Sequence record: LR756501.1
Length of the DNA stretch: 64,000 bases
Reading direction: 5' to 3' (one strand)
Of the stretch, positions 20,863-56,849 are shown piece after piece. The translations under genes were made by a program, and so were the position numbers. A model generated the notes under the pieces. The model worked only from the letters and a program-made list of their open reading frames with translations. It did not search any database and was not told where the DNA came from. How positions within the stretch are numbered: the stretch's first letter is position 1; every line of letters starts with the position of its first letter.

Positions 20863-20960
20863 ACTGAATGATTTAATTTTAATTATATATTGTTGATCTG
20901 TGGGCAGGTTTAAATTTTTCGTTGCTTAATTTTTAATATATAGAATAAAAATCTACCTCC

Positions 20961-23048
20961 GTGAGTTTCAAAAAATTCCAAATAATTAATCCAGATACAA
21001 TAGGTAGTCCAGAACCAGGACACATATATCTAGGTAGAGACAATATAGGACTTTGGGAAAAATATCCAGACGGAGATTGGGTTTATATAGTAACTGGCGG
21101 TACAACAGGAGCTGGAACTAGTGGTACTAGTGGGGCTGCTGGATCATCTGGCAAAGATGGATCATTCATTGGATCGTCAGGTGTAAGTGGAAGCTCAGGT
21201 ATTTCAAGTAGTTCAGGTGTAAGTGGGAGTTCTGGTAGATCAGGAACAGATGGCACTGCTGGGACTAGTGGATATACTGGATCGTCTGGTACATCTGGTA
21301 CATCAGGTAAAACTGGTACTGCTGGTTCTAGCGGCACTAGTGGCACAACTGGTTCTAGCGGATCATCTGGTAAAGACGGTAATTTTTGGGGGTCTAGTGG
21401 TACATCAGCTACATCAGGTATAAGTGGAGGATACGGCGGAGCATCAAGGAAATGGAGATTCACAACGTCCACTTATCCAGTAACACCTGGTTATTTTTAC
21501 GCCTACGGAACAACATATAATTTAAACGATATAACTTATATAAGAATTAACGAACAAGATGGTGATAGTCAAGGAGTTAATAATTGGCTAAGTTCGTGGA
21601 CAAGTGGAATATTAAAAATAGAGGAGTGGGGGAATCCTCAAAATTTTGGATTATATTCGATAATAAGTGGAGTAACTACAAACAGCTTCATTGTGAGTTA
21701 TTATGAGATAAGTGGAATAACAGCTTATAGTGCTGATGGTGTTTTGACTAATGGTGTAGATTATTTAATATCTTACGTACCTGGTTCTGGTACATCTGGT
21801 GGAGGTAGTGGGAAGAATGGAACTAGTGGTTCTTCTGGTATTGGATATAATTATTTAGATATAACTATTGTAACGGCTTCAACATATACAGTATTACCAA
21901 GTGATACATTTTTATTAGTTGAAACTTTTCCGACTGTTGATGCTGAAGTGATATTACCTCCTTGTAATGGTGGTGGTAGAGTTATTAAAATTAAAAACAA
22001 TAATCTCAAACCTGTAAATATAGTTCCTAATACGTTTCTTTGGTATATTGTAGATACTGGTTATACTATATCTGATTATATTGATACAGAATTTTTTGCC
22101 CCTTGGTTTGTATTCACAGATGGAAATCCAAAATATCTATTGAATCAAGGAGTTATAGATATTGTGGATACTGAAACCCAAGATCAAATTTTACCTAACG
22201 GTGGATTGTGGGAAATAATAAATGAAGAAAATAGAAGTGTAACGATTTTAACAGGTTATACTGAACTACACGGCAATGATTTAATACCAAGATATATTAT
22301 ATGTTCGGGAGGTACTTATAATATATTATTACCACAGGCTTATAGAACGGGTGTAATTTTCAATTTCAAAAATGTTAGTAATGGTACTGTTACAATTAAC
22401 GCTCAACCTAGTGAATATATTGATGGTGCTTCCACTTTAATACTACCAGAGTATGTTTCTTTAGTTGATTCTGGTTATTATAATTGGAGCATATTCGAAG
22501 ATATAGATGTCGGGATAGCTGGATCTAGTGGTACAAGCGGGTCTTCTGGGACCAGTGGTAGTTCAGGAACAAGTGGCACTTCAGGTAGTTCCGGTGTAAG
22601 TCCTAATTTTAATACTGACGCAGATTTGTATTTTGAAACATCGACTAATACTTTATTTACACCAAACATATATTTAACTGGTTCTACTATAACTATAAAA
22701 AATATACAGAACACATCAGATAACGGTAGTAAATTAATACTTAGAGATAACGTTATAATGCAAGTAACAGGCGTTACATCTGGAATTACAGTATCAACAG
22801 GTTATACAACAACAACTAGTGATTATTATATAAGAGTCATAGCTTCAGGCATGACTATAACACTACACGACGCCACTCAATCTTATCAAGAATTAATAAT
22901 TAAAAACGCCTCAAACGGTAATATAAATGTACAAAGACAAAATTCTAACACAATGGACGGTCTAACAACAAAAACATTATTAACACTACAATGTTTAATA
23001 GTAAAAGACGGTGCTATAAATAGTTGGGATATAATATCTTTCTATTAA
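20961..23048 (+). CDS. putative tail fibre/appendage protein with (G-S/T-S/T)n collagen-like repeats
   Basis: GTSGSSGTSG triplet tracts near 21100-21440, 21780-21845 and 22510-22600; fibre-like ILLPQA...FNFKN repeats; late box at 20934. Confidence 0.65.
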   Translation: MSFKKFQIINPDTIGSPEPGHIYLGRDNIGLWEKYPDGDWVYIVTGGTTGAGTSGTSGAAGSSGKDGSFIGSSGVSGSSGISSSSGVSGSSGRSGTDGTAGTSGYTGSSGTSGTSGKTGTAGSSGTSGTTGSSGSSGKDGNFWGSSGTSATSGISGGYGGASRKWRFTTSTYPVTPGYFYAYGTTYNLNDITYIRINEQDGDSQGVNNWLSSWTSGILKIEEWGNPQNFGLYSIISGVTTNSFIVSYYEISGITAYSADGVLTNGVDYLISYVPGSGTSGGGSGKNGTSGSSGIGYNYLDITIVTASTYTVLPSDTFLLVETFPTVDAEVILPPCNGGGRVIKIKNNNLKPVNIVPNTFLWYIVDTGYTISDYIDTEFFAPWFVFTDGNPKYLLNQGVIDIVDTETQDQILPNGGLWEIINEENRSVTILTGYTELHGNDLIPRYIICSGGTYNILLPQAYRTGVIFNFKNVSNGTVTINAQPSEYIDGASTLILPEYVSLVDSGYYNWSIFEDIDVGIAGSSGTSGSSGTSGSSGTSGTSGSSGVSPNFNTDADLYFETSTNTLFTPNIYLTGSTITIKNIQNTSDNGSKLILRDNVIMQVTGVTSGITVSTGYTTTTSDYYIRVIASGMTITLHDATQSYQELIIKNASNGNINVQRQNSNTMDGLTTKTLLTLQCLIVKDGAINSWDIISFY

Positions 23049-26718: not shown

Positions 26719-27348
26719 TTATTGTGCCAAAGGTTTTAATTCGTTCGGAGTTATCTTTTGGAACATCCAATGATCATCCGTTGTAACATGTCCTTTCCTA
26801 ACATATTTTGCGATAGATTTTTCAAAATCTTCAAATGAAAAACTAGAAGCCAATCTAATTACAAATCCCTCTTGTATTTCAGTATTAATTTTAAAATTCT
26901 CAATAAATTCTTTGTTATAGATACCACGCCAAAGAACTGGAACGTGCTCTAATCCAAGGAATTTACTAAATGTAACAGTATCGTCCCACGATAAACAAGT
27001 ATCGTCTTCGTCCCAGATAGAGAAAACCATAAAGTAACTAGGAAGATTTTTATAAGATAATGAATGTTGAGCGTAAAGATTTTCACCACAAATTTTCCAA
27101 TCGTCTGGTATATTATATTTAATATTGCCCCAAAGTCCTTTTACCCAATGTCTTGAAGGATGATCAGCACTATCTAACGAACGGGCGTGAATACAATCAT
27201 TCATCATAGTAGTATTTTCACCATCCATTTTCTCTGTGATAACAATCTCTTTACCTTCGAAAAAAGCAATATCCTGATGGATTTTATCATCCGAAGTCGC
27301 TCCAGGGCTCCAATTTACGTGAAAAGTACGTGGGTATTTACGTTTCAT
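26719..27348 (-). CDS. RNA ligase (Rnl2-like nucleotidyltransferase family)
   Basis: KYPRTFH...SPG...DD, ITEKMDGEN (motif I KxDG), GENL, FMVFSIWD, EGFV, KYVR. Confidence 0.85.
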   Translation of the reverse strand: MKRKYPRTFHVNWSPGATSDDKIHQDIAFFEGKEIVITEKMDGENTTMMNDCIHARSLDSADHPSRHWVKGLWGNIKYNIPDDWKICGENLYAQHSLSYKNLPSYFMVFSIWDEDDTCLSWDDTVTFSKFLGLEHVPVLWRGIYNKEFIENFKINTEIQEGFVIRLASSFSFEDFEKSIAKYVRKGHVTTDDHWMFQKITPNELKPLAQ

Positions 27349-27658: not shown

Positions 27659-27982
27659 TTAAGAAAAACATTCAGGACATCTACCGTCACTTACAAATTG
27701 AGTTCCACAATCGTCACAAGTTCTTAAAGGCATTTGTGGAGCAGTCTTTCTTCCTTTTATAAAATTATTCCACTGTTTATGATATTTCTTTTTATAATGT
27801 TCACAATTTTTTTCAGATTGTGATAAATAACATTCTGAATCACAAGCTAATCCTGCTTCTGAATTTGGGTATAGATAATCTAAAAAACAACCCCCTTCTG
27901 GACATTCACAAATTTCCCAATTCTCTTCACCGTAGGGATCAAGTTCTTTTTTAGAATCAAACATTTTAAATTTTTTTATCAA
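27659..27982 (-). CDS. Cys-rich DPYGEENW-motif protein (start may be the later ATG, MFDSKK)
   Basis: DPYGEENW at 27917-27940; CECPEGGC, CDSEC, CDDC...CPEC. Confidence 0.65.
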   Translation of the reverse strand: MIKKFKMFDSKKELDPYGEENWEICECPEGGCFLDYLYPNSEAGLACDSECYLSQSEKNCEHYKKKYHKQWNNFIKGRKTAPQMPLRTCDDCGTQFVSDGRCPECFS

Positions 27983-28102: not shown

Positions 28103-29011
28103 ATGAGAAACCAGAAGATAAGGACGTTCTACAAAAAAGAAATGGCTTTAAATGATATAGTCGCAGAGAACTACTCAATGTCGCCCAACAAACCGAAGTT
28201 GTTCATGGACCACGTCGAAAAGAAAGACAAGAAAGACCTCCTTATAGTTGACGAAGACTTCGATCCTTTCGGTAGAGAAGATTTCTACATCGCTCATACA
28301 AAAGAATACGTTGACGCCTTCTTTGATAACATTCCAAATCTTAACGTTAGTAATAAATTAAAGTGGACACCAGAGTTTGCTGATACAGTAAGGTACACAA
28401 ACGCTTCACTTTACGCTGCTATTAAACATAGCATTGATTATCCTGATATAGTGAGTTTATCACCAACTGCTGGATTTCATCACGCTATGCCACATAGAGG
28501 TTTTGATTTCTGCACGTTTTCTGGTCAAGTTATAGCTTCTGCTAAAATATACCAACAATACAAATTAGCTGGCGCTTACATAGATTTGGACGCACATTTT
28601 GGTAACTCCATTGGAGACAGCATGGGTTACGTTAAAGATTTAGATAAGGCCATTGTGATGAACATTAACCCTGAAGATTACCACGATTGGTACATTAAAA
28701 ATCTAAAAAGAGATCTTAAAATTTTAGAGAAAAAAATATTAAATAATGAGGCCGACTACATAGTATTTGCTCACGGTGCTGATAGCACAGAAGACGATGA
28801 TTTAGGCGACGGTCAACTAACTGATAAAGGCTGGGTCAGAGTTAGTGAAATAGTCTATAACTTCATTAACAATATTGATTTAAAATTAGGAAGACCGATT
28901 CCTTTAACTTTATCTTTATTTGGCGGATACAGAAGAGCCAACTTCGATAGTGTGTTGGACTTACATTTAACAGATATAGAAAAATGCCACAGTATCCTCT
29001 GTAAAAATTAA
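28103..29011 (+). CDS. Zn-dependent histone deacetylase-family (HDAC/AcuC-like) protein
   Basis: AHTKEYV, AGFHHA, GFDFCTF, IDLDAHFGN, HGAD...DDLG, LFGGY motifs. Confidence 0.85.
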   Translation: MRNQKIRTFYKKEMALNDIVAENYSMSPNKPKLFMDHVEKKDKKDLLIVDEDFDPFGREDFYIAHTKEYVDAFFDNIPNLNVSNKLKWTPEFADTVRYTNASLYAAIKHSIDYPDIVSLSPTAGFHHAMPHRGFDFCTFSGQVIASAKIYQQYKLAGAYIDLDAHFGNSIGDSMGYVKDLDKAIVMNINPEDYHDWYIKNLKRDLKILEKKILNNEADYIVFAHGADSTEDDDLGDGQLTDKGWVRVSEIVYNFINNIDLKLGRPIPLTLSLFGGYRRANFDSVLDLHLTDIEKCHSILCKN

Positions 29012-31209: not shown

Positions 31210-31368
31210 CTTCTCCCGTATATATAAATAGTGAGAAGTTGGATAACTTCATATTTTTCAGTTGGAAAACTATCAAAAAATGAGAAAAATTATAATATAT
31301 ATAGTATTAAACGTATTAAATTGTATGTGCGTCGTGGGACAAACATAGTAAAAAATAATTAAAAAAAT

Positions 31369-34300
31369 ATGCCAATAAGTAACAAAGATTTAGGAAAGTA
31401 CAAACGTCCAGGTATTTTCATCGAAGAGATAGATCTATCGATGATTGAACGTCCAATTCAGGAAGTACTAATCAACTTAGTACCTGGCTTCTCTAAGAAG
31501 GGTCCTTTCAATAAGCCTGTTAGGGTTAATAGCCCACAGGAATTTGAGGACATTTTTGGACCAGTGGACAAAAACCTTGAAAACAAAGGTTCATACTTCC
31601 ACAGATTTGTAGAGGATATGTTGACTGTGGGTCCCGTTTGGGCACTCAATTTATTGAAGACTGATCCTACTAGAGATCAATTGGAATGGGAATCTATCTC
31701 AGTTTCAGCTCAGTACGATAACGGTCCTAAGAACTCTTCACCTTATGAAAGATTTTTCAATAGACAAGATTTCTGGGAAAGAGACGTAGAATCCTTTATG
31801 GATATTGTTGATCTAGAATTTATTGATAATCCAAATCAACCAAATCCAGCACATGATTTGTTTAGTATAACAAATATGGGGGATAAGAAAATCACATTAT
31901 GGACATTCAAATCTTCAATAACAGGATTTGACGTATCTGCTGAAAGTTGGTACGGTGGAGCTGATAAAGTTCCTTTATTCATGAACACAAAAGATTACAT
32001 CTCTGATTATATGATTAGTGTTTTATCAGTTGTAGGTGACTATACTGATTACGCAACTCTAAGTGTTGACCCATATTGGGGCAAATACTTTAACGCTAAT
32101 GGTTTAATCAAGACACAAGTTCAAAATTTTGTTAGTGATAGATTAACAACAGTTAACGCTTATTACGATGTATGTTTAATTCCAAATTTCAGAGATACAT
32201 CTGGAAGAGATATGTATATCAAGAATGTTATTAACGCAGCAACCGAGCAAACTGGTTTATTCTGTTATTACAACGAAGAATATCTGTTAAACTCAGATTT
32301 CTACAAAGGTAATATTGATACAATTGGTGCAACTTTAGTTCTTACAGAAGACGTTATTAACAATGTTATTCCAAAAACTTCAATTGATTTTATGTCTTAT
32401 AAAACCAATTTAAGTGAAAGTGTAACATACGCTGAAAAAGGATTAGATTACGTTGGGAACCCATTTGGTAACTACGACGACGATATGATAACATCATGGG
32501 TTAGTGGTAGAACAGGTCAATATACAAACTGGTACACCAACATAGCACCAACAGCAGTAACTAATATGTATTCAACTGTTATAACAGGTGTTGTTTCATC
32601 AGCTATCACATTAACAAGTGTAACAGGTGTTGAAGTTAACGATACAATCTATTTCAGTAAATCATTCGGTATCTTAGAAAAAGATTTACCATATTATGTT
32701 TTAACAATAGTTGGTAATAACATAACAATATCTAAAACCAAAGGTGGTCCAATTTTAACGGGACTTTCTTCTGGCACAAATGTTTTCGCTTATAGTTTAA
32801 AACAAAAATTCTACGATGCTATTGGAAGTTTCTCTTACAATATCAACACAGGATATACATTATCAGATAGTGTATTATTCTTAGAACCATTTGTTGTTAA
32901 CAATAGTGCACAAACATACAGTAGATATGATATTGTATATTTAAGTACAGATAATTCAACAATACATACAGTAAAAGGAAATCAAGTAACTGGTACATCA
33001 CCAAGTAAACCAAACTTCCTTTTAAGCAACGCCAATACAATCATCCTTGGTTATATGAAAATTGAATATAACTTAGTGTCTAGTGTAACTCCAACTTTTA
33101 CAAAAACTTGGACAGCAGTAACAGTAGATGAAACTAAATATTTAGTTTTAGCTGATGGTACAGACGTTTCAGCAGTATCTGGTGTAACAGTAGCTGGTAT
33201 CAAATATTTAGATCTTTATTTCTTAGGAACATCTGGATCAACAGATTATACCAACTATCTCAAATTAAGAAAATCAAAAATTTTCACCGAGATTTACACC
33301 AATTTATTAACTGGTAAATCTGTTATAATTAACAAAGCAGACGGAAGTAAATATTCTGTAACAGCTACAGTTTTTGAGGCTACAACCACATCTGACGCTC
33401 ACGTTATCATATACTTCGATAGTTTAACTGCTACAAATCCATTTAATTATTACGTAAGTGGAAGTTTCTTAATCTATTATATAGACTACGAATTAGATTT
33501 TACCCCAGGTACAAATTCATTGGACACTTTAACAACAACTAATAAACCAATTGGTTATTATTCTGGTCTTAATACTGGTATAGTTGCCAAATACTCAACA
33601 TTATACCAAGATTATTACAACGGTATAATTAATAATGGTGATTACATTTATCAAAATAACGATAGTGGAACAACAATAAAAATTTATTTGAAAATGTTCT
33701 TGAATTCAGATAAGAACTTAACAATTAAATTTGCTAGTTCTCCAGAAGGTGATCCAGATACTACATTAACTAATGTTAGTGTAAATTATCAAGACGCTAA
33801 TGGTAACATAGCTTTAATAGTTTACTCAAATAAATCAAATTACAAGCAATCACTTGAAATTGAAAACACAAGTTATATCACAGATTTTAATAATGTAAAC
33901 TATGTTTATGTTGATAAAACTAGATATTCAGAAGTAACTAAAGGCTGGTACTTAGAAGCATATTATGACGCATCATATTATGATTCCCCAGGTGAAGGTT
34001 ATATCTTAGGAGCAGTTCCAAGAAAACTTGTTCGTATAACAAAGACAGCTATCGATACTGTTAACCCAATGTTAAAAATCTTATACGCTGACGGCCCAAT
34101 TAGAATTTTAAGTAACCCAACAGGTTCAACTTACGATTACTATACCACAGCTTATATGTCGATTGATAACTATGTTGGTGAATACAATGGTTTAACATTA
34201 AAACCATTTACAGTACATCCAGATTCAATGCCAAATAACACAGACGCTAGATTAGATAGCATAATGAGTGTGTTAGATAAATCAACAAACTTAGCTAAGG

Positions 34301-38426: not shown

Positions 38427-38651
38427 ATGAACCAACTTCAAATGCCTACTGTTGTTGTAGATGGTTGGCCATATTACGAATTTGAAAGATATATAAAACT
38501 GTTGAATGAAAAGAATGAAAATGAAAAGAAACGACACGAGGACAGTGAAAAGAACCAACCTAATATGCCTAATATGAATAGTATAGGAAATCTAGCTAAA
38601 AGCTTTAATCCATCAAATTATAAGCTACCTAATTTTAACTCCCCATTCTAA
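38427..38651 (+). CDS. gp51-like small chaperone ORF, probably extended upstream by frameshift
   Basis: WPYYEFERYIKLL; frame open back to 38280 with no ATG/GTG/TTG. Confidence 0.55.
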   Translation: MNQLQMPTVVVDGWPYYEFERYIKLLNEKNENEKKRHEDSEKNQPNMPNMNSIGNLAKSFNPSNYKLPNFNSPF

Positions 38652-38668
38652 AAATGGGGTTTTTTTAT
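38638..38668. terminator. bidirectional terminator
   Basis: CCCCATT-CTAAA-AATGGGG plus T run at a convergent junction. Confidence 0.7.
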
Positions 38669-39265
38669 TTTATCTAAAATGTTATTTACATTATCTTTCC
38701 AATCTTCTTCCGTGTTAATAACAAAATCTGAATTCTTTATTTTATAATCCTGATTCATAAGTTTATTTAACCTATTATCTATTTCTTCATCAGTATAATT
38801 ATTCCTGTGTTTCAATCTTTTCCTTATAGTATCGATATTAGCGTAAACACAAATAATATAATCGTAATCTTTTTCCACTTTATGCTCGAAAATTAAAGCT
38901 GATTCGTAAAAGATAATCTTCTCACTTTTATGCTTTTCTACAAAATCATACCAATCTTGTCTTAAATGAACTTTGAATATCTTATTTAATTTATCTAACT
39001 CGTTCTTATCATTAAATACTATATTAGCAATATATTTAGTGTTATAAACACCATCTTTATATGATTCTTCACCGAACTCTTTTATTATATCATTTTTCAA
39101 TTCATTATTTCTATTGGCTATACTTTTAGCTTCGACGTCACTATAATAAACTGTATAACCTTTATTCTGTAAATATTTACAAACGGTTGATTTACCAGAA
39201 GCTATACCACCAGTAATGGCTACTGTTACAGGTTTATTAATAAAAGATTCGAATGTTATTATCAT
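38648..39265 (-). CDS. coaE: dephospho-CoA kinase
   Basis: VAITGGIASGKSTV, YYSDVEAK, FYESALIFE, DFVINT; N-terminal MIITFESFIN extension. Confidence 0.9.
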   Translation of the reverse strand: MIITFESFINKPVTVAITGGIASGKSTVCKYLQNKGYTVYYSDVEAKSIANRNNELKNDIIKEFGEESYKDGVYNTKYIANIVFNDKNELDKLNKIFKVHLRQDWYDFVEKHKSEKIIFYESALIFEHKVEKDYDYIICVYANIDTIRKRLKHRNNYTDEEIDNRLNKLMNQDYKIKNSDFVINTEEDWKDNVNNILDKIKKPHF

Positions 39266-39711
39266 AATCCTTTTCTAATTTGAGTTGAGCTTATATTTTC
39301 CACGTCTTTTGTGGCTATCATATAAATAGTTTCTATTTCTGGAGCAACTCCTTTATTATAATTATCAACTGCTTTTTCCCAGGTAAAATCTTTTTCGTCT
39401 CTCATTCCTCTCAACATATATTTAGCACCTATCTTCTTACAGAAATCAACTGTTAATCCGTTGTAAGATTCTACTATTATTTTAGGATTATTAATCTTAC
39501 TTTTTATGATCTCTTTTCTTTCTTCAATAGTATAATGTCCTTTCTTATCTTCATTTATACCTATAGCCACTACTATTTTATCGAAGAGTGGAAGGAATCT
39601 TTCAACTAATTGAATATGACCGTCGTGCACTGGATCGAATGAACCTGGAAAAACGGCGATTCTATCACCGTATTTAAATTTCTCGTTATATGATTTTATT
39701 CTCATAGACAT
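39262..39711 (-). CDS. coaD: phosphopantetheine adenylyltransferase
   Basis: IAVFPGSFDPVHDGH, LRGMRD..DF..E, ISSTQIR. Confidence 0.92.
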   Translation of the reverse strand: MSMRIKSYNEKFKYGDRIAVFPGSFDPVHDGHIQLVERFLPLFDKIVVAIGINEDKKGHYTIEERKEIIKSKINNPKIIVESYNGLTVDFCKKIGAKYMLRGMRDEKDFTWEKAVDNYNKGVAPEIETIYMIATKDVENISSTQIRKGL

Positions 39712-39776
39712 TATATATAAAATTACGAATTTAGATTTTAAAAATGGAGAATTTTATTTTTATATATAGCCATAAG

Positions 39777-40676
39777 ATGAAAACTTTTAATCAATTTATC
39801 AATGAAGGCAAACTAGGACCAGGTTCAAGAGCAGAAACCGCAGGTAAGTTCATGGGTAGAGCTAAAGACGATAAATACGCAGATGAAGTCTTCAACGAAA
39901 TGATAAAAGACTACGAAGAAAGCGGTAAAAATCTTAAAAAGATTCATATTTCATCTAGGTTTAGTACAATGAGATATTATTTTGGAACTACAAGGTGGGA
40001 CGCTGGTAACAGGAAAGTTGGAGATAAAGAAGTAAGAGTCAACGCCGTTAATAATACTGGTGCTTTATTCGAAATTCTTGAATGGCACGAGAATCCAAAA
40101 CACGATCCAAATTACCAGATGGATGTTGATATTGAATGGGAAGGTAACTTTCCACATGTAATTAGAAGAAATGATAATCAGGATAATAGAGATAAAATGA
40201 GAATCTATGATCAGTACGAAGAACAATTTTATATTTCAAGAAATCTTGCTAGAAAAATGATTATTTATTTTGCTAACGAGTACGATAAACAATACCCACA
40301 ATTAAAGAATAATCAAGAAGGCAGAAGTTATTGGCAAATTAAAGCCATAGAAAATGGTGAAAAAATAAGAATTGGATGGGTTGATCAATTTGCTAAGAAC
40401 GGTGTTGAGTGTATATTTGACGTATTTGAACCAGGCGAAAAAGAAAAATATGAAAAATGGATTAAAAACAGTTTTGCTGTAAAGACAAAAAGTAAAGACG
40501 GTTATCCTATAACATTTTGTTATCCAGCACCAGATATAGATGTTGATAAAGTGGTTGATCCTTATGGGGAAGAGGAATGGGGAGATGATTCAGAACAAGG
40601 TGTAATAGAGTGGTTAAACACGTTAACTAAAAAAGAGATTGAAGAAAAAATTCAAAAAGAAATAAACAAATACTAA
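39777..40676 (+). CDS. CTS-like and DPYGEEEW protein
   Basis: Start moved to ATG 39777 giving MKTFNQFINE (T4 IPII/IPIII CTS is MKTYQEFIAE); DPYGEEEW at 40557-40580. Confidence 0.8.
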   Translation: MKTFNQFINEGKLGPGSRAETAGKFMGRAKDDKYADEVFNEMIKDYEESGKNLKKIHISSRFSTMRYYFGTTRWDAGNRKVGDKEVRVNAVNNTGALFEILEWHENPKHDPNYQMDVDIEWEGNFPHVIRRNDNQDNRDKMRIYDQYEEQFYISRNLARKMIIYFANEYDKQYPQLKNNQEGRSYWQIKAIENGEKIRIGWVDQFAKNGVECIFDVFEPGEKEKYEKWIKNSFAVKTKSKDGYPITFCYPAPDIDVDKVVDPYGEEEWGDDSEQGVIEWLNTLTKKEIEEKIQKEINKY

Positions 40677-40696: not shown

Positions 40697-40978
40697 ATGG
40701 GAACGATCGTCAAGACATACGAAGAGTGGGGATTTTTTAAAAAGGAATTGACCCCAGATGAAGAATATCAAAAACAAAAAAAACAAGCTTTAAGAGATAA
40801 GGTGAAACCAGGTAACGCCCCTGAAGTAGAACCAGGTGAAGATGAAGATAAAGAACAAGAAGATAGACAAATGAATAGAAGAGAAGTTAACAAGATTAGA
40901 AATCTCAAAAATGACGATTACGGTGAAGAATTTTGGGAGGACGAAGCAGGAGATAAAAACACAAAATCACCTTGTTAA
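40697..40978 (+). CDS. CTS-like protein with DDYGEEFW variant
   Basis: MGTIVKTYEEW; N-terminus paralogous to 41362-41580. Confidence 0.7.
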   Translation: MGTIVKTYEEWGFFKKELTPDEEYQKQKKQALRDKVKPGNAPEVEPGEDEDKEQEDRQMNRREVNKIRNLKNDDYGEEFWEDEAGDKNTKSPC

Positions 40979-40995
40979 AAATTAATTAAAATGTT

Positions 40996-41361
40996 ATGGC
41001 AGATTTAAAAAGATTCGAAGAATTCGAATATAATGAAGAAGAAGATGACGAGGCGGTCCAATTCAAAGAAGGAGACAAAGTTGTATATCTTAGACCCGGT
41101 TATAAGCACGATAACGAAGTAGGTACAATTAGACGTGTTCGTAAAGACGGTAGATATAGTATTTTATTAGACGACGATACTCATTTCGCAGCTAGTGCTG
41201 AATACGTTTTCCCTTCTTCAAAGAAGAGAAAAGTGAAAAAGAACGATAGAGTTTATAACGATTACGACGATTGTGGCCAAGGTGGCGGTGGTTGTGGTGG
41301 TGGTTATCGTCCAGCCGACTACGGTGGTTGTGGTGGTGGTAGAAATAATAATTATTGCTAA
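40996..41361 (+). CDS. CTS-like, KOW/SH3-like domain and Gly/Cys-rich tail
   Basis: MADLKRFEEF; FKEGDKVV...GTI..V...YSILLD; GGCGGG twice. Confidence 0.7.
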   Translation: MADLKRFEEFEYNEEEDDEAVQFKEGDKVVYLRPGYKHDNEVGTIRRVRKDGRYSILLDDDTHFAASAEYVFPSSKKRKVKKNDRVYNDYDDCGQGGGGCGGGYRPADYGGCGGGRNNNYC

Positions 41362-41580
41362 ATGGAAAACATAACAACATTCGAAGAATTCTCCTTTTTC
41401 AGAAAGAAAGAGTTAACTCCTGACGAGGAATATAGAAGACAAGCTAAAGAAGCTGAAAGAAATAGACCTAGAGATCCTAATACTAAATATTCTAAATATT
41501 GGGGTATTTATGACGACGGGATGGAAGAAGAGGAAGAAGAAGACGAAGAAGATGAAGAAATTGAATACGATACACCATGA
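41362..41580 (+). CDS. small acidic CTS-like protein
   Basis: MENITTFEEFSFFRKKELTPDEEY; poly-E tail. Confidence 0.65.
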   Translation: MENITTFEEFSFFRKKELTPDEEYRRQAKEAERNRPRDPNTKYSKYWGIYDDGMEEEEEEDEEDEEIEYDTP

Positions 41581-44044: not shown

Positions 44045-44215
44045 TTGAAAGACAGACCTTTAAAAGAAAAAGAGAGTATTTGGCTTTGTCCAGACTGTGA
44101 TGGTAAAGGTTATATTGATAAAGGTCAATGTCCTCTATGTAAAGGTAAAGGTGAACTTAGATTTCCTACCACTTCCTCTCAAAAGGATTTCGAAGATCCC
44201 CAGCCTTCTGATTAA
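44045..44215 (+). CDS. small DnaJ-type CxxCxGxG zinc-finger protein (56 aa, TTG start, not in ORF track)
   Basis: CPDCDGKG...CPLCKGKG; overlaps the terminase 3' end by about 50 nt. Confidence 0.5.
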   Translation: MKDRPLKEKESIWLCPDCDGKGYIDKGQCPLCKGKGELRFPTTSSQKDFEDPQPSD

Positions 44216-46433
44216 ATGGTGATAAGAAAGGTATAGGTTTTATTTCAGGTTTAACTTTAGGATAGAATCTTTTATACGCTCCACTAAATGATTGAAAATC
44301 AACCATTGATCCGTCGTCTTTACTACCTAAAAATTTAAGTATAACTCCTTTTTCTTTTTCTGTAATATTAAAATCTGAATAAGTATCTACCATGTTCTTG
44401 TAATAGTTATTATCAAATAAACTACTTAAATTTATAAGCGACATTACACAGTCATCATTACCTGTTTCCGAACGATAAGTGATCTCCCCGTTTGGAGTCT
44501 CTTTTTTGGAGAATGATTTTAATTCTATGATATTCTTCTCGTTATGAAGTACTAGATTATCTTTCTTCACAGCGTCTTGGAAATCTTTTAGGAGTAATTT
44601 CTTATTGTAACCTATAAGTAATCCTATTTTTGGTTTGGGGTCTGTTTCTCTGTGTTTATATCTGGCAAATATAGCGTCCATAAAATCATTGTTATCATTG
44701 AATACGTGACGCATATTGTTAATTAAATCGTTGCCCAGATTCTTATTCATTTCCACCACTATCTTAACCTTCTCGGGATCAAATATTTCAAATACTAAAA
44801 GATATAATATGTGAGCCACTTCATTTATAGAGTAGACGTTATTTCTGAATAATCCTATTTGTTCTAGTTTGAATAAGTCATATTTATTGGAATAAAAGTC
44901 TTTCTTTTTTTCTATTAGTTTTTCGTCTTTCATCATTAATCTAAAGATGTTAAACACAGTATAATCAAGACCTAACCCTTCTGCCAAGTCTATACCTATT
45001 GTTATATAATAATCTTTAGCTTTGGCTAAATCAAATATTTCTGGATGATCTAGTAAGAAAGTTAGACTATCGTAAGGTAGTGTTAATTTCTTTTCGAAAT
45101 TTTCTAAATGAGGAGTTCCAAATTCGTATTGTTCGTTCATGAAACTTTCAAACATAACACTATCGAACAACAATTTATCGTCTGTAATGAACTGAATCTC
45201 GTACTCTTGATTGAACATCGCCTGGCCACCAATAAGAGATGTTTGCTCTTCTTGCCAGTTAGTTATTCTTACTACTTCGGGTAAAGGTATAACTTCATTT
45301 ATTCTTACTTGCCTTATCTCATCTATTTTACAATTATCTCTTACAGTTTTACCGTCGTCTTCGAAGAATTTAATGAAATACCAAGTTTCTTGTTCAAGTC
45401 TTTTACTATACATCTCGTAACCCAATTCCTTTAAACGGTTTAATATTTCTTCTTGGGTCACGTTGTATTGTCTCATTTTATGTTCAAGAAACATAAACTT
45501 GGTATCTCTTCTACCTTTAACTTGATGCCAGTAGACACGCATGGCTTCGTATTTATTCCATCTTGGATCTTCTTTAGGTCTTTCAGCGTCTACCAATAAT
45601 TCCCAGAATAAATTATAACCATCTGGCGTTGATGTTATAATAATTTTAGAATTTTCTACCTGTACAACAGTAGGTACAACAGCACCGTAGTACTGACGTA
45701 CAATATTCTCTGGTACTTTCGCGAACTCATCGAGATATAACAAGTCAATGGTAAAACCGATGGATGGGTCCTTAGATCTCGCCTGACTCTGAATTCTACT
45801 ATTGTTATCAAAGGCAATCTGCTTTTCGTTCCAGTTTGTTACACCAGTCTTCAAAAAGAAAGGTAATAACTTGTAAATATCTTTTATCTTTCTAATAATT
45901 TCTTTTACAGTATCACCTTTATTAGCCACGATCATAACACCCTTATCGTCATTAAACATAACAAGGTGTAATATAACAATAGAAGCAGATACAGTATTAA
46001 GATTTAATATATCGTTAGCGTAATAACTATGTTCGTTAGACTTTATAGATAAGTCAAACATAGATACTTTATTATTTAATTTGTTAATTGATTTTATTTT
46101 AGAAAGACCTTTCTTTGTTAGAATTATATCGTTAAGAGTTAAATCTTTAACGAATTTAATCATATGTCCTTCGCAGAATATACTATGTATATCGGCACAC
46201 TTTATCTTTAAACCATTTTCAAGTTCAAGTTCGTGTATAGCGTATGGTTGTGTGAAATTGATCTCTTCAATAGGTACAAATCCGTAGTCTGTTTCAACTG
46301 AAAGATTTTCTAATGGTAGAATGTTTATAACCTTTTTCAGAGGATCGTTTTGATCAAATACAACGTTTCTATATTCGTATTTCTCAATTAATTCTAGTAA
46401 TTTATATATAACTCTTCTTAAAAATTTTCGCAT
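44166..46433 (-). CDS. terL: terminase large subunit, C-terminal part, preceded by a 146-aa split C-intein
   Basis: IntC ...KCADIH...MFDLSIK...YYANDILNLN|TVSAS; Walker B IDLLYLDEFA; nuclease IDLAEGLGLDY and NDDCVM. Confidence 0.92.
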   Translation of the reverse strand: MRKFLRRVIYKLLELIEKYEYRNVVFDQNDPLKKVINILPLENLSVETDYGFVPIEEINFTQPYAIHELELENGLKIKCADIHSIFCEGHMIKFVKDLTLNDIILTKKGLSKIKSINKLNNKVSMFDLSIKSNEHSYYANDILNLNTVSASIVILHLVMFNDDKGVMIVANKGDTVKEIIRKIKDIYKLLPFFLKTGVTNWNEKQIAFDNNSRIQSQARSKDPSIGFTIDLLYLDEFAKVPENIVRQYYGAVVPTVVQVENSKIIITSTPDGYNLFWELLVDAERPKEDPRWNKYEAMRVYWHQVKGRRDTKFMFLEHKMRQYNVTQEEILNRLKELGYEMYSKRLEQETWYFIKFFEDDGKTVRDNCKIDEIRQVRINEVIPLPEVVRITNWQEEQTSLIGGQAMFNQEYEIQFITDDKLLFDSVMFESFMNEQYEFGTPHLENFEKKLTLPYDSLTFLLDHPEIFDLAKAKDYYITIGIDLAEGLGLDYTVFNIFRLMMKDEKLIEKKKDFYSNKYDLFKLEQIGLFRNNVYSINEVAHILYLLVFEIFDPEKVKIVVEMNKNLGNDLINNMRHVFNDNNDFMDAIFARYKHRETDPKPKIGLLIGYNKKLLLKDFQDAVKKDNLVLHNEKNIIELKSFSKKETPNGEITYRSETGNDDCVMSLINLSSLFDNNYYKNMVDTYSDFNITEKEKGVILKFLGSKDDGSMVDFQSFSGAYKRFYPKVKPEIKPIPFLSPFNQKAGDLRNPFERKW
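45996..46433 (-). mobile_element. split intein, C-terminal fragment (IntC)
   Basis: Hint-fold blocks B, F, G; terminal Asn followed by Thr+1; no endonuclease. Confidence 0.85.
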
Positions 46434-46484: not shown

Positions 46485-47438
46485 TTATGGGGTGTGGCCA
46501 TTGCCTTCTGCTCTTACTAGGAAATCTTCCCAAGGTTCCCAAGAAAACTCGTCATTTTGTTTATTTCTTTGGAACTGCCAACCTAAGTGTTGCATAGTCA
46601 TATTTCTACTTGAGCAATCGTTATAGATTATATTTAATCCGTTATCTTCTATATATTCTATAACTCTATAAGTATCAAATATTGATGGTAAATAATGACC
46701 AGCGTATATTAATTTTTCGTTCAACCCCTTTTTCTTTAACGCGTCTCTATTATCATCGCACACAGAAAGTTCGTGCAAATTAAGATAATCTAATCCAATC
46801 TCATTTAATCTTGGTAAGACTGAGATAAGTTTATCTACTTGCCAAAATTCAGAAGGTACTTCAACACAAATCTTATCAAAAATCTTCTTACAGTAAACAA
46901 GTTTATCTATTATATCTTCTCTATATCCTGTTGCAGCGAGATCAAATCTAATCTCATTAATACCGTGTTCTTTTAATTTAATACAATCTTCTTCTGTAAC
47001 AAGAGTTCCATTAGTATAAATCCATTTATAAAGATTAAGTTGTTCAAAATTTTCGTTGATAAAATCTAACCATTCATATACTTTATCAAGATACATAAAA
47101 GGTTCACCACCAGAAAATGATATACCAGTTATTCTTGGATTCTTATAAATAACTCTTTTTAAATCAACTAAAGAATGTATATCATCGTTACCGCCATTTG
47201 CCCATATGAATTCATCAACACCGTGTCTTGATATTTGTGGACAAGAAGCACATTTAAGGTTACAACTAACACCTATATAAACACATATCCATTGCCCACT
47301 CTTACAGGCGTAACAACCCTGTGATAATTCCTTACCTATTGGTACTATGGTAGCACCTGAATTTGATATTTCTATTTTATCTATAATTCTTTGTCTAAGT
47401 GAGTCTGATATATTTCTAGCATCTACATATTCTATCAT
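46485..47438 (-). CDS. radical SAM protein
   Basis: CNLKCASC CxxxCxxC, SFSGGEP, YTNG; extra N-terminal GCYAC. Confidence 0.88.
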   Translation of the reverse strand: MIEYVDARNISDSLRQRIIDKIEISNSGATIVPIGKELSQGCYACKSGQWICVYIGVSCNLKCASCPQISRHGVDEFIWANGGNDDIHSLVDLKRVIYKNPRITGISFSGGEPFMYLDKVYEWLDFINENFEQLNLYKWIYTNGTLVTEEDCIKLKEHGINEIRFDLAATGYREDIIDKLVYCKKIFDKICVEVPSEFWQVDKLISVLPRLNEIGLDYLNLHELSVCDDNRDALKKKGLNEKLIYAGHYLPSIFDTYRVIEYIEDNGLNIIYNDCSSRNMTMQHLGWQFQRNKQNDEFSWEPWEDFLVRAEGNGHTP

Positions 47439-54699: not shown

Positions 54700-55323
54700 A
54701 TGATTAATTTTATAGCAAACAAACTAAATAATAGATATAAAAGGCTTTTAGAAGAAGATATAGAAAGACAGATAGCTGAAGACGAAAGAAAGAAAGCCGA
54801 AGAAGAAAGATTAGCAAATATACCACTAAATATTCCAGATAATAAATGGTGGGTTAGTAGTAATCCTATTGAAGAGGATAAATGGTACGATGGTGTATTT
54901 TCAAGTGGCACTACAATACCAGATAGTAAATGGTCAAACGGTACTTGGTTAGGAGTATCTGGATCATCTGGTTACGGAGTATCAGGAAGTGCCGGTGTAT
55001 CAGGTAGTGCAGGCGTATCAGGAACTAGAGGACTTAGTGGATCATCTGGTTTTTCAGGGACTTCTAGTTATTCTAATCCAGGTATAAAATACGCTGAATA
55101 TTTAGCAGAACAAATAGATAAATCTATAAATTATCAAGAATATATAGCAGAACAACTTGATAAAAGTATTCAATATAGTGAATATGTAGCTGAGCATATT
55201 GATGTAACAAATTATACAAATTGGATGAACGGTTACGCTCAAGCACACGCTAAACCAAAAAAAGAAGTTAAAAGGGTTTATAGTCAAGAAGATCCTTACG
55301 GTGAAGAAGATTGGTCAGTATGA
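54700..55323 (+). CDS. mosaic protein: GxSGSS repeats, 14-aa YxEYxAExxDKSIx repeats, C-terminal DPYGEEDW
   Basis: Read directly from the translation. Confidence 0.75.
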   Translation: MINFIANKLNNRYKRLLEEDIERQIAEDERKKAEEERLANIPLNIPDNKWWVSSNPIEEDKWYDGVFSSGTTIPDSKWSNGTWLGVSGSSGYGVSGSAGVSGSAGVSGTRGLSGSSGFSGTSSYSNPGIKYAEYLAEQIDKSINYQEYIAEQLDKSIQYSEYVAEHIDVTNYTNWMNGYAQAHAKPKKEVKRVYSQEDPYGEEDWSV

Positions 55324-55817: not shown

Positions 55818-56849
55818 ATGGCAGAGTACAAAGACAAAGATGAAAATTGGATGTTTGATTCATCAAATGACGAACAAAACCAAGAGTTGGCTTTCTTAAA
55901 CAAGGAAACCAAAAACCAAGACGGTATTTATCGTCCAAACGTAAAAGACGCAGCAGACCCTAAGGGTGCTGGTTACAAAGCAACAATCAGATTTCTTAGA
56001 AACGTATTTTTAGATGGCTCGGGCACAGGTCCAGCAGCTATTACAAAGCACGTTCACTATGTTAAACCAGAAGGTTCTTTAGAGGACTATCCAGATTTAG
56101 CAGGATATTATGATTGTGAAAAGAATGTTTCTCAACAAACACCATGTCCGTTGTGCCAAACTTATTGGAAACTTTTTAAATCCAATAATCAGGCAGATGT
56201 TATCAAGTCTGGTTTAATCAAAAGGAGTACTAAATTTTATTCCTATATTATGGTTATCGAAGACGAACAACATCCCGAGTTGGTTGGTAAAATTTTAGTT
56301 TATCCTTACGGAGCTAAGATCAAAGGAAAAATCAATTCAGAAATTAACGGTGATGTTAGTGGAGAGAAATGTAATATTTTCGACTTCGTAACAGGAAAGG
56401 ATTTTAGACTTATTATTAAGATAGTTAAGACTCCAAATCCAAATGGTAGTGGCACAGTTGATATGCCAAACTACGACACCAGCACATTCTTACCATCTTC
56501 ACCTATCAAAATTTGGAACGAGAAAACAAGTAAATTTGTTACTCCTCCAACAACAGAAGATGAAAACGGTAAAATTATGCTCACAGACAAGAAATGGCAA
56601 GCTAAGATCAGAGAAATCATTTTAGCTCGTCCAGCCAATGTAAATCTTGACGACCATACACCTTCAAAGGACGGATGGGACGACGCTAAGAGATCAAATG
56701 TGGAGAAAATTGTTCAGGTTCTTAACGGAAACAGTGTTCAATATGCTGAATCGTCAGTAAAGAAATCTAGTGTGAAAACACCAGCGGCAGAAGTAATTGA
56801 AGAGGAATCTTTCGACGATCTCTTTGATTTCGAAGCAGATGATAAGTAA
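55818..56849 (+). CDS. single-stranded DNA-binding protein (T4 gp32-like)
   Basis: YKATIRFL, H...C...CPLC Zn site, YSYIMVIEDEQHPELVGKI, G.DFRL, NYD.S.F, acidic tail; start moved to ATG 55818. Confidence 0.85.
   Translation: MAEYKDKDENWMFDSSNDEQNQELAFLNKETKNQDGIYRPNVKDAADPKGAGYKATIRFLRNVFLDGSGTGPAAITKHVHYVKPEGSLEDYPDLAGYYDCEKNVSQQTPCPLCQTYWKLFKSNNQADVIKSGLIKRSTKFYSYIMVIEDEQHPELVGKILVYPYGAKIKGKINSEINGDVSGEKCNIFDFVTGKDFRLIIKIVKTPNPNGSGTVDMPNYDTSTFLPSSPIKIWNEKTSKFVTPPTTEDENGKIMLTDKKWQAKIREIILARPANVNLDDHTPSKDGWDDAKRSNVEKIVQVLNGNSVQYAESSVKKSSVKTPAAEVIEEESFDDLFDFEADDK

What the first reader, a model, noticed from the sequence alone, without database searches (positions are those of the whole stretch)
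38648..39711. CoaD-CoaE operon whose enzymes carry capsid-targeting-like leaders
Seen: overlapping coaD and coaE behind a TTTATATATA box. CoaE begins MIITFESFIN and CoaD begins MSMRIKSYNE ahead of the normal catalytic start. Established: these catalyse the last two steps of CoA synthesis. Inference: metabolic enzymes packaged in the virion and delivered at infection to raise CoA or control dephospho-CoA, possibly feeding the GNAT/HDAC pair.
Basis: partly seen in the sequence, partly recalled or inferred. Interest (0 to 1): 0.68.

Follow-up and report, generated by a model that had tools for sequence, protein, structure and literature searches.

The report
CoA enzymes with T4-like capsid tags
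The largest described "huge phage" (735 kb) carries working-looking genes for the last two steps of coenzyme A synthesis, and both enzymes bear a short N-terminal peptide of the kind phage T4 uses to load proteins into its capsid; over 100 other proteins of this phage bear it too, so the phage may inject a large protein cargo, though packaging is not shown.

Summary
coaD (39262..39711, minus) and coaE (38648..39265, minus) overlap by ATGA behind a TTTATATATA box, and both pass NCBIfam equivalog cut-offs. One correction: coaD most likely starts at its second ATG (MRIKSYNE...).

The N-terminal extensions are real and lineage-specific. Only the closest metagenomic phage relatives have them. Bacteroidota CoaD, solved PPAT/DPCK structures and CoaD/CoaE of two other huge phages lack them.

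They are not isolated oddities. About 100-126 of 975 ORFs in this genome start with the same amphipathic motif, against about 5 expected. A profile built from these leaders ranks T4 internal proteins IPIII, IPII and IPI in the top four of 245 T4 ORFs. The motif is absent from two Bacteroidota phage controls. With the leader removed, the carriers are mostly unrelated; they include GluRS, PPK2, DeoC and radical-SAM enzymes.

The TTTATATATA box belongs to a late, structural-gene promoter class. The phage also encodes untagged coaC and coaB.

Virion packaging remains an inference (about 0.4). CoaE and CoaD lack the canonical [ILV]-x-Glu cleavage end. I found no support for the proposed GNAT/HDAC link.

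The parts
39262..39711 (-). coaD (phosphopantetheine adenylyltransferase), 149 aa from the first ATG. The probable true start is the second ATG at 39703-39705 (147 aa). The C-terminus ends about 20-25 aa earlier than in cellular PPATs.
   Evidence: TIGR01510 139.2 bits against a 103.3 cut-off. HxGH, ISSTxxR and the K/R/D/E core residues are conserved. PDB PPATs align query 17-146 to chain 3-134 of about 160 residues. AF2 pLDDT is 84.9.
39664..39705 (-). CoaD N-terminal leader (MRIKSYNEKFKYGD). It is conserved in the phage clade and absent from cellular CoaD.
   Evidence: Alignment A1. Profile score is 12.0 bits with a one-residue gap, p about 0.001. AF2 predicts coil at low confidence.
38648..39265 (-). 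coaE (dephospho-CoA kinase), 205 aa. Its start overlaps the coaD stop (ATGA).
   Evidence: TIGR00152 118.9 bits against a 65.55 cut-off. The P-loop GGIASGKST is present. AF2 pLDDT is 91.2. PDB DPCKs align from query residue 13-15.
39230..39265 (-). CoaE N-terminal leader (MIITFESFINKP). It matches the genome-wide CTS-like motif except that Lys replaces the usual Glu at its end.
   Evidence: Leave-one-out profile score 14.5 bits, p about 1e-4. Conserved in P0002-P0005 and absent from the other 21 sequences of alignment A2.
39712..39721 (-). Late-type promoter-like box TTTATATATA for coaD-coaE. It lies 6 nt before the second ATG, which predicts a leaderless mRNA.
   Evidence: TT[AT]ATATATA occurs at 215 sites in the genome, 151 of them within 45 nt upstream of a co-oriented ORF. 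Spacing to the ATG is bimodal: 5 nt, or 15-25 nt. Portal, protease, capsid, terminase, tube and wedge genes carry it.
39759..39768 (+). Divergent copy of the same promoter box, 8 nt before the ATG at 39777.
   Evidence: Read directly from the sequence; spacing class.
39777..40676 (+). Neighbouring gene whose probable product starts MKTFNQFINE-G, a canonical leader with an I-N-E end. It also carries DPYGEEEW near its C-terminus. No family match.
40697..41580 (+). Three small ORFs (40697-40978, 40996-41361, 41362-41580) that each begin with the same leader type (VKTYEEW, KRFEEF, TTFEEF).
38641..38659 (+). Hairpin plus T-run terminator of the convergent plus-strand gene 38427..38651. It overlaps the last codons of coaE.

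Best explanation
coaD-coaE is a genuine two-gene operon of the 735-kb Bacteroidota-associated huge phage LR756501.1. It encodes an intact-looking PPAT and DPCK. Together with the unlinked, untagged coaC and coaB genes, the phage has four of the five steps of CoA synthesis.

The operon is read from the phage's late, structural-gene promoter type (TT[AT]ATATATA), probably as a leaderless mRNA that begins at the second ATG of coaD. coaE is translated by ATGA coupling.

In this lineage only, both enzymes have gained a 10-14-residue amphipathic N-terminal peptide. It belongs to a leader family carried by about 100-126 of the phage's 975 ORFs, and by profile it is the same motif as the T4 capsid-targeting sequence (MKTYQEFIAE).

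Most likely mechanism (inferred): the leader docks newly made enzyme onto the scaffolding core of the prohead. A fraction is then enclosed in the capsid and enters the next host cell with the DNA. There it can convert the host's 4'-phosphopantetheine and dephospho-CoA into CoA before phage genes are expressed. The unpackaged remainder does the same late in infection. Neither leader ends in the canonical [ILV]-x-Glu site, so the tag would probably stay on the enzymes.

Shown: the enzymes, the operon, the lineage-specific extensions, the genome-wide motif and its match to the T4 CTS, and the promoter class. Inferred: late timing, leaderless mRNA, packaging and injection.
For: Enzyme identity. 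Catalytic motifs are conserved in alignments A1 and A2, and the folds are confident.

Extensions: they are conserved only in the closest phage relatives, at 70-97% identity for CoaD and 65-84% for CoaE. This holds even where the two genes are divergent and each has its own TTAATATATA-N5-ATG promoter. They are absent from Bacteroidota CoaD (50-55% identity), from solved structures, and from huge phages LR745206 and LR756502.

Leader family: 115-126 ORFs score at least 8 bits against 5-8 expected. With the leader removed, 109 of 126 carriers are singletons in an all-against-all comparison. The profile ranks T4 gp61.1, IPIII, IPII and IPI as the top four of 245 T4 ORFs; the CTS sequence and its function are taken from PMC8442874 and PMC5694885. 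Of 98 strong leaders, 42 have Glu at +6, and 36 of those 42 have I/L/V/M at +4. That gives a hydrophobic-x-Glu end; T4-type prohead proteases cut after Glu.

Controls: crAss001 has 0 of 100 and Lak-B5 has 3 of 326 or 4 of 442 ORFs with the motif. The related huge phage LR745206 has 54 of 533. Synonymous codons in the leaders are no more AT-rich than in gene bodies, so selection acts on the peptide.

Head machinery: the genome has a portal, a head maturation protease with weak similarity to the T4 gp21 family, a second small protease paralogue, and a capsid protein, plus a T4-type terminase N-terminal domain and a gp32-like protein.

Promoter: structural genes carry it, whereas the gp32-like gene, the ribonucleotide reductase, coaB and coaC do not. 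Leader genes are enriched behind it, 44 of 150 against 82 of 825.
Against: There is no virion proteome, no transcript data and no cultured host; no RNA run holds the locus.

CoaE has Lys where cleavable leaders have Glu, and none of its four leader-bearing relatives (P0002-P0005) has Glu there either. CoaD fits the profile only with a one-residue gap.

The same leader sits on GluRS, a sigma factor, PPK2, DeoC, radical-SAM and GNAT proteins. If the leader means packaging, more than 100 protein species would have to be packaged, which is far beyond T4's handful.

The leader is over-represented on genes of the predicted leaderless-mRNA class (37% against 8.5%). That leaves room for a role tied to expression rather than to sorting.

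Similarity to the T4 gp21 family is below Pfam's cut-off (24 bits against 27). The loss of the PPAT C-terminal helix region leaves enzyme activity unproven.
Confidence: 0.4

Rival explanations
1. The enzymes are ordinary auxiliary metabolic enzymes that act only in the infected cytoplasm. On this reading the leader is a peptide signal for something other than capsid loading: docking to another phage assembly or compartment, controlled turnover, or a feature co-inherited with a mobile promoter-plus-leader cassette that helps expression from leaderless mRNAs.
For: Leaders occur on many cytoplasm-type enzymes, including GluRS, a sigma factor, PPK2, DeoC and radical-SAM proteins. They are strongly associated with the predicted leaderless class. 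Neither the CoaE nor the CoaD leader has the canonical [ILV]-x-Glu end. The phage has a fuller CoA pathway (coaC, coaB), which fits general pool boosting. Leader status is gained and lost between orthologues.
Against: The only experimentally defined function of this motif is capsid targeting in T4, and the profile picks out exactly the T4 internal proteins. Synonymous-site usage shows peptide-level rather than nucleotide-level constraint. Of the 101 ORFs that match the strict core pattern, 57 have no promoter box directly upstream, coaE among them. AT-rich phages of Shine-Dalgarno-less Bacteroidota hosts lack the motif. The association with late promoters fits virion components.
Confidence: 0.35
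2. The extensions are structural idiosyncrasies of this enzyme clade, for example an N-terminal segment that compensates for the lost C-terminal helix of PPAT. On this reading their resemblance to the leader motif is coincidence helped by AT-rich codon bias.
For: In CoaD, gain of the N-terminal extension and loss of the C-terminus co-occur in the same clade. The CoaD match to the motif is weak without a gap.
Against: AF2 places both extensions as detached, low-confidence segments that do not pack in place of the missing helix. CoaE has a full-length fold and still carries a leader scoring 14.5 bits (p about 1e-4). Two adjacent enzymes acquiring the same motif by chance is unlikely. The motif frequency in internal windows of the same proteome is below 1%.
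Confidence: 0.1
3. The proteins have been repurposed. One would be a nucleotidyltransferase and the other a P-loop kinase acting on a non-CoA substrate, such as a precursor for DNA, glycan or virion modification, and not on 4'-phosphopantetheine or dephospho-CoA.
For: The PPAT C-terminus is truncated. The neighbourhood is rich in glycosyltransferases, radical-SAM and structural genes. Expression is probably late.
Against: Both proteins exceed curated equivalog cut-offs. All core substrate and ATP motifs are conserved. The two genes stay paired in relatives. The phage also encodes the two preceding pathway steps.
Confidence: 0.07

Closest known systems
[quoted passage not shown]
   Same: Both lie at the extreme N-terminus, span about 10 residues, and follow the amphipathic pattern hydrophobic-K/T-x-F/Y-x-x-F/Y-I/L/V-x-E. 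A profile built only from the huge phage's leaders ranks the three T4 internal proteins within the top four of 245 T4 ORFs. A prohead protease distantly related to T4 gp21 is present. Many leaders end in [ILV]-x-E followed by a small residue.
   Different: Here the leader is attached to more than 100 mostly unrelated proteins, including housekeeping-type enzymes, whereas T4 has a handful of small basic proteins. The CoaE and CoaD versions lack the canonical [ILV]-x-Glu end. No packaging or cleavage has been demonstrated.
Phage-encoded coaD/coaE auxiliary metabolic genes (e.g. Microcystis phage MaAM05 coaD, Myxococcus phage Mx1 PPAT, huge phages LR745206 and LR756502)
   Same: They belong to the same enzyme families in phage genomes.
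   Different: In LR745206 and LR756502 the genes are unlinked, have standard N-termini (MKTIAIYPGSF..., MIRVGITGE...) and are not truncated at the C-terminus. Here the genes are paired, tagged and sit behind a late-type promoter.
Bacteroidota CoaD (about 152 aa)
   Same: They share 50-55% identity across the catalytic core, with all motifs conserved. This group is probably the donor lineage.
   Different: The phage clade has 14 extra N-terminal residues and lacks the last 20 or so residues (the ...NGGDxSxFVP... tail).
Processed ejection and inner-body proteins of giant phages (phiKZ, 201phi2-1, SPN3US)
   Same: These are large capsids loaded with dozens of proteins. Their propeptides are removed after Glu by a protease related to T4 gp21, and a diverged protease paralogue is present (PMC5694885).
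   Different: Those propeptides are longer and follow S/A/G-x-E. No shared short N-terminal motif on metabolic enzymes has been described for them.
Eukaryotic bifunctional CoA synthase (COASY: PPAT fused to DPCK)
   Same: The last two steps of CoA synthesis are coupled in one genetic unit (own knowledge).
   Different: Here they are two separate overlapping genes of bacterial type. No physical association was tested.

Membership tests
CoaD / PPAT (TIGR01510) | Profile score above the curated equivalog cut-off | tested here: met
   139.2 bits against 103.3. PDB PPATs match with E down to 5e-29.
CoaD / PPAT (TIGR01510) | Nucleotidyltransferase HxGH motif, ISxTxxR motif, and conserved Lys, Arg, Asp and Glu of the active site | tested here: met
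   H29-D-G-H32 and I140-SSTQIR146 are present. K56, R101, R104, D108 and E112 are invariant in A1.
CoaD / PPAT (TIGR01510) | Complete fold including the C-terminal helical segment after ISxTxxR | tested here: not met
   The profile is matched only to position 130 of 155. The protein stops 3 residues after the point where PDB chains continue for about 25 more. The truncation is shared by the whole phage clade.
CoaD / PPAT (TIGR01510) | PPAT catalytic activity | not testable with these tools
   Needs an enzyme assay or complementation.
CoaE / DPCK (TIGR00152) | Profile score above the curated equivalog cut-off, and full-length coverage | tested here: met
   118.9 bits against 65.55, covering residues 15-196 and profile positions 2-186 of 188.
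CoaE / DPCK (TIGR00152) | P-loop GxxxxGK[ST] and a P-loop kinase fold | tested here: met
   G19-GIASGKST27 is present, with invariant T18, G19, G24, K25 and D43. The AF2 model has pLDDT 91.2.
CoaE / DPCK (TIGR00152) | DPCK catalytic activity | not testable with these tools
   Needs an enzyme assay or complementation.
T4-type capsid-targeting sequence | Extreme N-terminal amphipathic motif of the MKTYQEFIAE type | tested here: met
   CoaE scores 14.5 bits (p about 1e-4). CoaD scores 12.0 bits only with a one-residue gap (p about 0.001). The same profile recovers T4 IPI, IPII and IPIII.
T4-type capsid-targeting sequence | Leader ends in a prohead-protease site (hydrophobic-x-Glu, with the cut after Glu) | tested here: not met
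   CoaE reads F-I-N-K-P, and its four relatives also lack Glu. CoaD has Y-N-E but out of register. By contrast, 36 other leaders in the genome do have [ILVM]-x-E.
T4-type capsid-targeting sequence | The phage has a T4/herpes-type prohead protease and T4-like head genes | tested here: inconclusive
   PF03420 gives 24.1 and 23.6 bits, below the 27-bit cut-off. The PHROG head maturation protease family matches at E 5e-27 and 3e-19, next to the portal and capsid genes. No scaffold (gp22-like) protein was identified.
T4-type capsid-targeting sequence | The protein is physically present inside the capsid, and the leader is sufficient for loading | not testable with these tools
   Needs virion mass spectrometry or a reporter encapsidation assay.

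The most novel reading that the evidence does not exclude
This huge-phage lineage has expanded the T4 capsid-targeting system into a general sorting code. More than 100 different proteins would be loaded into the giant capsid and injected with the DNA, delivering a ready-made metabolic and translational starter kit to the host. The cargo would include CoA-synthesis enzymes, a glutamyl-tRNA synthetase, PPK2, a sigma factor and many orphan proteins. The second lineage-specific motif, DPYGEExW (90 proteins), could be a further docking or processing signal of the same system.
Probability: 0.25. Interest if true: 0.88.

Novelty: new variant of a known kind. Interest (0 to 1): 0.62.

Why it matters
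Huge phages are known only from metagenomes, and most of their genes are orphans. A simple sequence rule that marks about a tenth of the proteome as one sorting class would give those genes a first functional handle. The class shares its motif with the one experimentally proven capsid-loading signal.

It is also directly testable in T4, where CTS-reporter assays already exist.

If the tag does mean packaging, metabolic enzymes such as PPAT and DPCK would be delivered as protein at infection. That would be a new kind of host takeover for bacterial viruses and a possible reason why such large capsids evolved.

If it does not, then the T4 CTS motif has a second, unknown role that is widespread in this clade.

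In either case, the four-step CoA pathway adds CoA to the cofactors that large phages rebuild for themselves.

Tried and rejected
1. Alternative start codons that would remove the extensions. None exist between the annotated starts and the catalytic cores. Only the Met1/Met3 choice in CoaD is open.

2. Extension as a replacement for the missing PPAT C-terminal helix. AF2 shows residues 1-17 as a low-confidence coil. The CoaE extension is a short low-confidence helix detached from the core.

3. Motif as a by-product of AT-rich codons or of Shine-Dalgarno-less translation. I rejected this for three reasons. Internal windows of the same proteome match at under 1%. crAss001 and Lak-B5 show only background levels (for Lak-B5 I ran both TAG-as-sense, from published knowledge, and table 11, with the same result). 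Synonymous codon use in the leaders is not more AT-biased than in gene bodies.

4. Paralogy as the source of the shared N-termini. Rejected: 109 of 126 carriers are singletons once the leader is removed.

5. Sigma-70-type promoter scan of the locus. It found nothing above the shuffled expectation.

6. Expression evidence. No RNA run holds the locus, and the one metatranscriptome from a holder sample has none of its words.

7. Remaining CoA-related genes. No type I or type III pantothenate kinase and no phosphopantetheinyl transferase were found. The type II search was uninformative because its controls did not match anything.

8. GNAT in the window. Pfam found none among the ORFs I scanned.

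9. Structure-library search of the CoaD model.

Full report
**What the window is.** The window matches positions 565061-629060 of LR756501.1 exactly. This is the 735,411-bp "uncultured phage" genome. It is the largest genome in the huge-phage survey PMC7162821, where it is placed in the Mahaphage clade and predicted to replicate in Bacteroidetes. I rebuilt the public record from 20-kb pieces for genome-wide statistics. It has 32% G+C, and a simple greedy caller finds 975 ORFs of at least 50 aa.

**The observation.** Two minus-strand ORFs sit at the stated coordinates: 39262..39711 (149 aa) and 38648..39265 (205 aa). They overlap by ATGA.
- The first is CoaD/PPAT: TIGR01510 139.2 bits against a 103.3 cut-off, and PF01467.
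- The second is CoaE/DPCK: TIGR00152 118.9 bits against 65.55, and PF01121.

Profile and PDB alignments begin at CoaD residue 17-18 and CoaE residue 13-15, which correspond to residues 3-5 of native enzymes. No alternative start codon lies between the annotated starts and the catalytic cores. The extensions are therefore encoded and must be translated. The catalytic motifs are intact: HxGH, ISSTxxR and the K/R/D/E core in CoaD, and the P-loop in CoaE. AlphaFold models are confident for the cores (pLDDT 84.9 and 91.2). They leave the extensions as low-confidence, detached segments.

**Are the extensions phage-specific?** Yes.
- For CoaD, a tight clade of metagenomic proteins (70-97% identity, 147-150 aa) shares the extension M(R/K)IK(S/T)(F/Y)NE(K/Q)(F/Y). 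The same clade has a C-terminus that stops right after ISSTxIRKxL.
- Bacteroidota CoaDs (50-55% identity, about 152 aa) start 1-3 residues before the first strand and run about 20 residues longer.
- For CoaE, four relatives (65-84% identity) share (I/K)T(F/Y)ES(F/Y). All more distant homologues, including named Ignavibacteria and Kapabacteria enzymes, start at the first strand.
- The relatives lie on phage-like contigs. On a 152-kb contig the synteny is the same as in the window. On a 49.9-kb contig coaD and coaE are adjacent but divergent, each with its own promoter box. The leaders are therefore not a by-product of the gene overlap.
- Three other huge phages encode CoaE, and two of them encode CoaD-like proteins. 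All have ordinary N-termini and the genes are unlinked.

**The leaders belong to a genome-wide family.** Many ORFs in the window start the same way. Across the genome, the strict core [FY]-x-x-[FYW] with polar x occurs in the first 14 residues of 101 of 975 ORFs. In internal windows the rate is 2-3%.

Aligned on the first aromatic residue, the consensus is [ILV]-[KT]-[KNT]-[FY]-[ED]-x-[FY]-[LIV]-[NK]-E. A log-odds profile gives at least 8 bits for 115-126 ORFs against 5-8 expected, and at least 12 bits for 74 against about 1.

CoaE scores 14.5 bits leave-one-out (empirical p about 1e-4). CoaD scores 4.8 bits ungapped (p 0.018) and 12.0 bits with a one-residue gap (p about 0.001).

With the leader cut off, 109 of 126 carriers have no detectable similarity to each other. 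The leader is thus a shared module on unrelated proteins. The carriers include cellular-type enzymes:
- a GluRS whose catalytic domain starts at residue 27;
- DeoC, whose domain match starts at residue 48;
- two radical-SAM proteins;
- PPK2, a TPM phosphatase, a GNAT and a small sigma factor.

**Is it the T4 capsid-targeting sequence?** The T4 CTS is MKTYQEFIAE. It loads internal proteins, or any protein fused to it, onto the scaffolding core, and gp21 then cuts it off (PMC8442874; PMC5694885). I scored all 245 T4 ORFs with the profile built only from the huge phage. The top four were gp61.1, IPIII, IPII and IPI. Five ORFs reached 10 bits against 0.25 expected.

Of 98 strong leaders in the huge phage, 42 have Glu at +6. 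Of those, 36 have I/L/V/M at +4, and 19 are followed by A, G, S or T. This is a hydrophobic-x-Glu end of the kind cut by T4-type prohead proteases, all of which cleave after Glu (the exact T4 L/I-x-E rule is my own knowledge).

The genome encodes a portal, an 807-aa head maturation protease, a capsid protein in a row, and a second small protease paralogue. Pfam similarity to the gp21 family is just under the cut-off. The window itself holds a T4-type terminase N-terminal domain, a gp32-like protein, a sheath, a tube, and baseplate wedge-like and hub-like genes.

**Controls against a trivial origin.**
- A Bacteroides phage without T4-like heads (crAss001) has 0 of 100 ORFs at 8 bits or more.
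- Lak-B5 (26.5% G+C, Prevotella host) has 3 of 326, or 4 of 442 under table 11.
- The related huge phage LR745206 has 54 of 533.
- Synonymous codon choice within leader codons is not more AT-biased than in gene bodies, so the constraint is on the peptide.
- Among 100 reciprocal-best-hit pairs with LR745206, leader status is correlated (odds ratio 27) but not fixed. GluRS, like CoaD and CoaE, is tagged only in the 735-kb lineage.

**The TTTATATATA box.** TT[AT]ATATATA occurs 215 times in the genome. Of these sites, 151 lie within 45 nt upstream of a co-oriented ORF.

Spacing to the ATG is bimodal. There is a sharp peak at exactly 5 nt (36 genes), which implies leaderless mRNAs, and a broad peak at 15-25 nt.

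Genes behind it include the portal, protease, capsid, terminase, tube, wedge, many tail-fibre and tail proteins, and peptidases. The gp32-like gene, the ribonucleotide reductase, coaB and coaC lack it. I read it as the late promoter, analogous to T4's TATAAATA (an inference).

At coaD the box abuts the first ATG and lies 6 nt before the second. Orthologues start at the equivalent of Met3 with 5-nt spacing. CoaD therefore most likely begins MRIKSYNE.

Leader genes are enriched behind this promoter (44 of 150 against 82 of 825, p 3e-9). The enrichment is strongest in the leaderless class (37% against 8.5%).

**More of the pathway.** The phage also encodes CoaC (217518-218582) and CoaB (218579-219250) with ordinary N-termini and no late box. 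I found no pantothenate kinase and no phosphopantetheinyl transferase. The phage thus has four of the five CoA steps. Only the last two are paired, tagged and behind a late-type promoter.

**Interpretation.** The enzymes, the operon, the lineage-specific leaders, their membership in a CTS-like family and the promoter class are all shown. Packaging into the capsid is the best-precedented meaning of the motif and fits the late promoter, but it is inferred.

Several points count against it:
- CoaE, in all five leader-bearing sequences, lacks the Glu.
- CoaD matches the motif only with a gap.
- More than 100 carriers, including an aminoacyl-tRNA synthetase and a sigma factor, would all have to be cargo.
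- The link with leaderless genes allows an expression-related or cassette-type explanation. The T4 internal-protein loci are a precedent here: by my own recollection, a conserved promoter-plus-CTS region there acts as a recombination cassette.

I put packaging at about 0.4, another peptide-signal role at about 0.35, structural idiosyncrasy at about 0.1 and a changed substrate at about 0.07.

A plausible pay-off of delivering PPAT and DPCK is rapid conversion of the host's 4'-phosphopantetheine pool to CoA. This rests on my own knowledge that PPAT is a secondary control point in E. coli, and it is not tested here.

The proposed link to a GNAT/HDAC pair is unsupported. An HDAC-like gene exists at 28103..29011, but no GNAT was found among the window ORFs I scanned.

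**Novelty.** coaD and coaE in phages are already annotated. I found no paper that combines "capsid targeting sequence" with jumbo, huge or mega phages, and none that mentions CoA in the source paper. The tagged, paired, late-type version and the hundred-fold expansion of a CTS-like leader are, as far as I can tell, undescribed. I rate it a new variant of a known kind.

Noticed in passing
whole record LR756501.1; in window e.g. 13959-14273(+), 27659-27964(-), 39777-40676(+) near its C-terminus, 9453-10281(+) C-termini, 54700-55323(+) C-terminus: A second, very sharp short linear motif, (E/D)(L/I)DPYGEE(N/D/E)W. It has 109 six-frame occurrences in 90 ORFs: 40 at the extreme C-terminus, 21 just after the N-terminal leader, and 44 internal, with up to 4 copies per protein. 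It has zero occurrences in LR745206 (first 400 kb), T4, crAss001 and Lak-B5, and two in a relative's contig. The small protease paralogue (record 11314-11850) ends with it. Its function is unknown; it could be a docking or cargo peptide, or a G-x-E protease site. No phage paper contains the string.
   Followed up: partly
whole record; window 39712-39721(-), 39759-39768(+): The promoter-like element TT[AT]ATATATA lies upstream of about 150 genes. In 36 cases the spacing to the ATG is exactly 5 nt, which predicts a large class of leaderless mRNAs in a phage of a Bacteroidota host.
   Followed up: partly
window 39744-40676(+): The longest ORF starts at 39744, but the promoter box lies inside its first 11 codons. 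The real start is probably the ATG at 39777, giving MKTFNQFINE-GKLG, a textbook CTS-like leader with an I-N-E end.
   Followed up: partly
record 217518-219250 (outside the window): Separate, overlapping coaC-like and coaB-like genes without leaders. With them the phage has four of five CoA steps. The same search also found a CoaB-type domain (and a weak CoaC-type match beside it) in huge phage LR756500.
   Followed up: yes
record 133267-134895(+), 337628-338419(+), 180704-181237(-), 455943-456539(+): Other cellular-type proteins carry the same leader as an add-on: GluRS (catalytic domain from residue 27), DeoC aldolase (from residue 48), a radical-SAM protein, and an unassigned (no family match) protein whose LR745206 orthologue is also tagged.
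   Followed up: partly
window 60358-63840(+): Ribonucleotide reductase large subunit interrupted by an intein that carries an HNH endonuclease domain.
   Followed up: no
window 44166-46433(-): Large terminase with a T4-type N-terminal domain. A weak, below-threshold intein-like match lies at its N-terminus. A radical-SAM gene sits directly downstream of it on the minus strand (46485-47438 is the upstream neighbour).
   Followed up: no
window 28103-29011(+): Histone-deacetylase-family domain protein (58.6 bits, N-terminal half of the profile only) behind a late-type box. The adjacent 425-aa ORF has no family match.
   Followed up: no
window 26719-27348(-), 55818-56849(+): An RNA ligase family protein and a T4 gp32-like single-strand DNA-binding protein. 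Neither has the late box.
   Followed up: no
record 423001-425028(-), 31235-31777(+): NAD salvage genes: a nicotinamidase-like protein, a NadR-type NMN adenylyltransferase/ribosylnicotinamide kinase, and a NadD-like fragment. CoA is therefore not the only cofactor pathway in this phage.
   Followed up: no
T4 record AF158101 18966-19130(-): The uncharacterised T4 protein gp61.1 (54 aa, MKTFKEFIKE...) scores higher on the huge-phage leader profile than the known internal proteins. This suggests it may be an unrecognised CTS-bearing capsid cargo.
   Followed up: no
window 20862-23045: A stretch of about 2.2 kb between a glycosyltransferase gene and a 739-aa ORF holds only short ORFs and weak 18-nt tandem repeats, with no tRNA. 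It may contain a repetitive or unusual gene.
   Followed up: no
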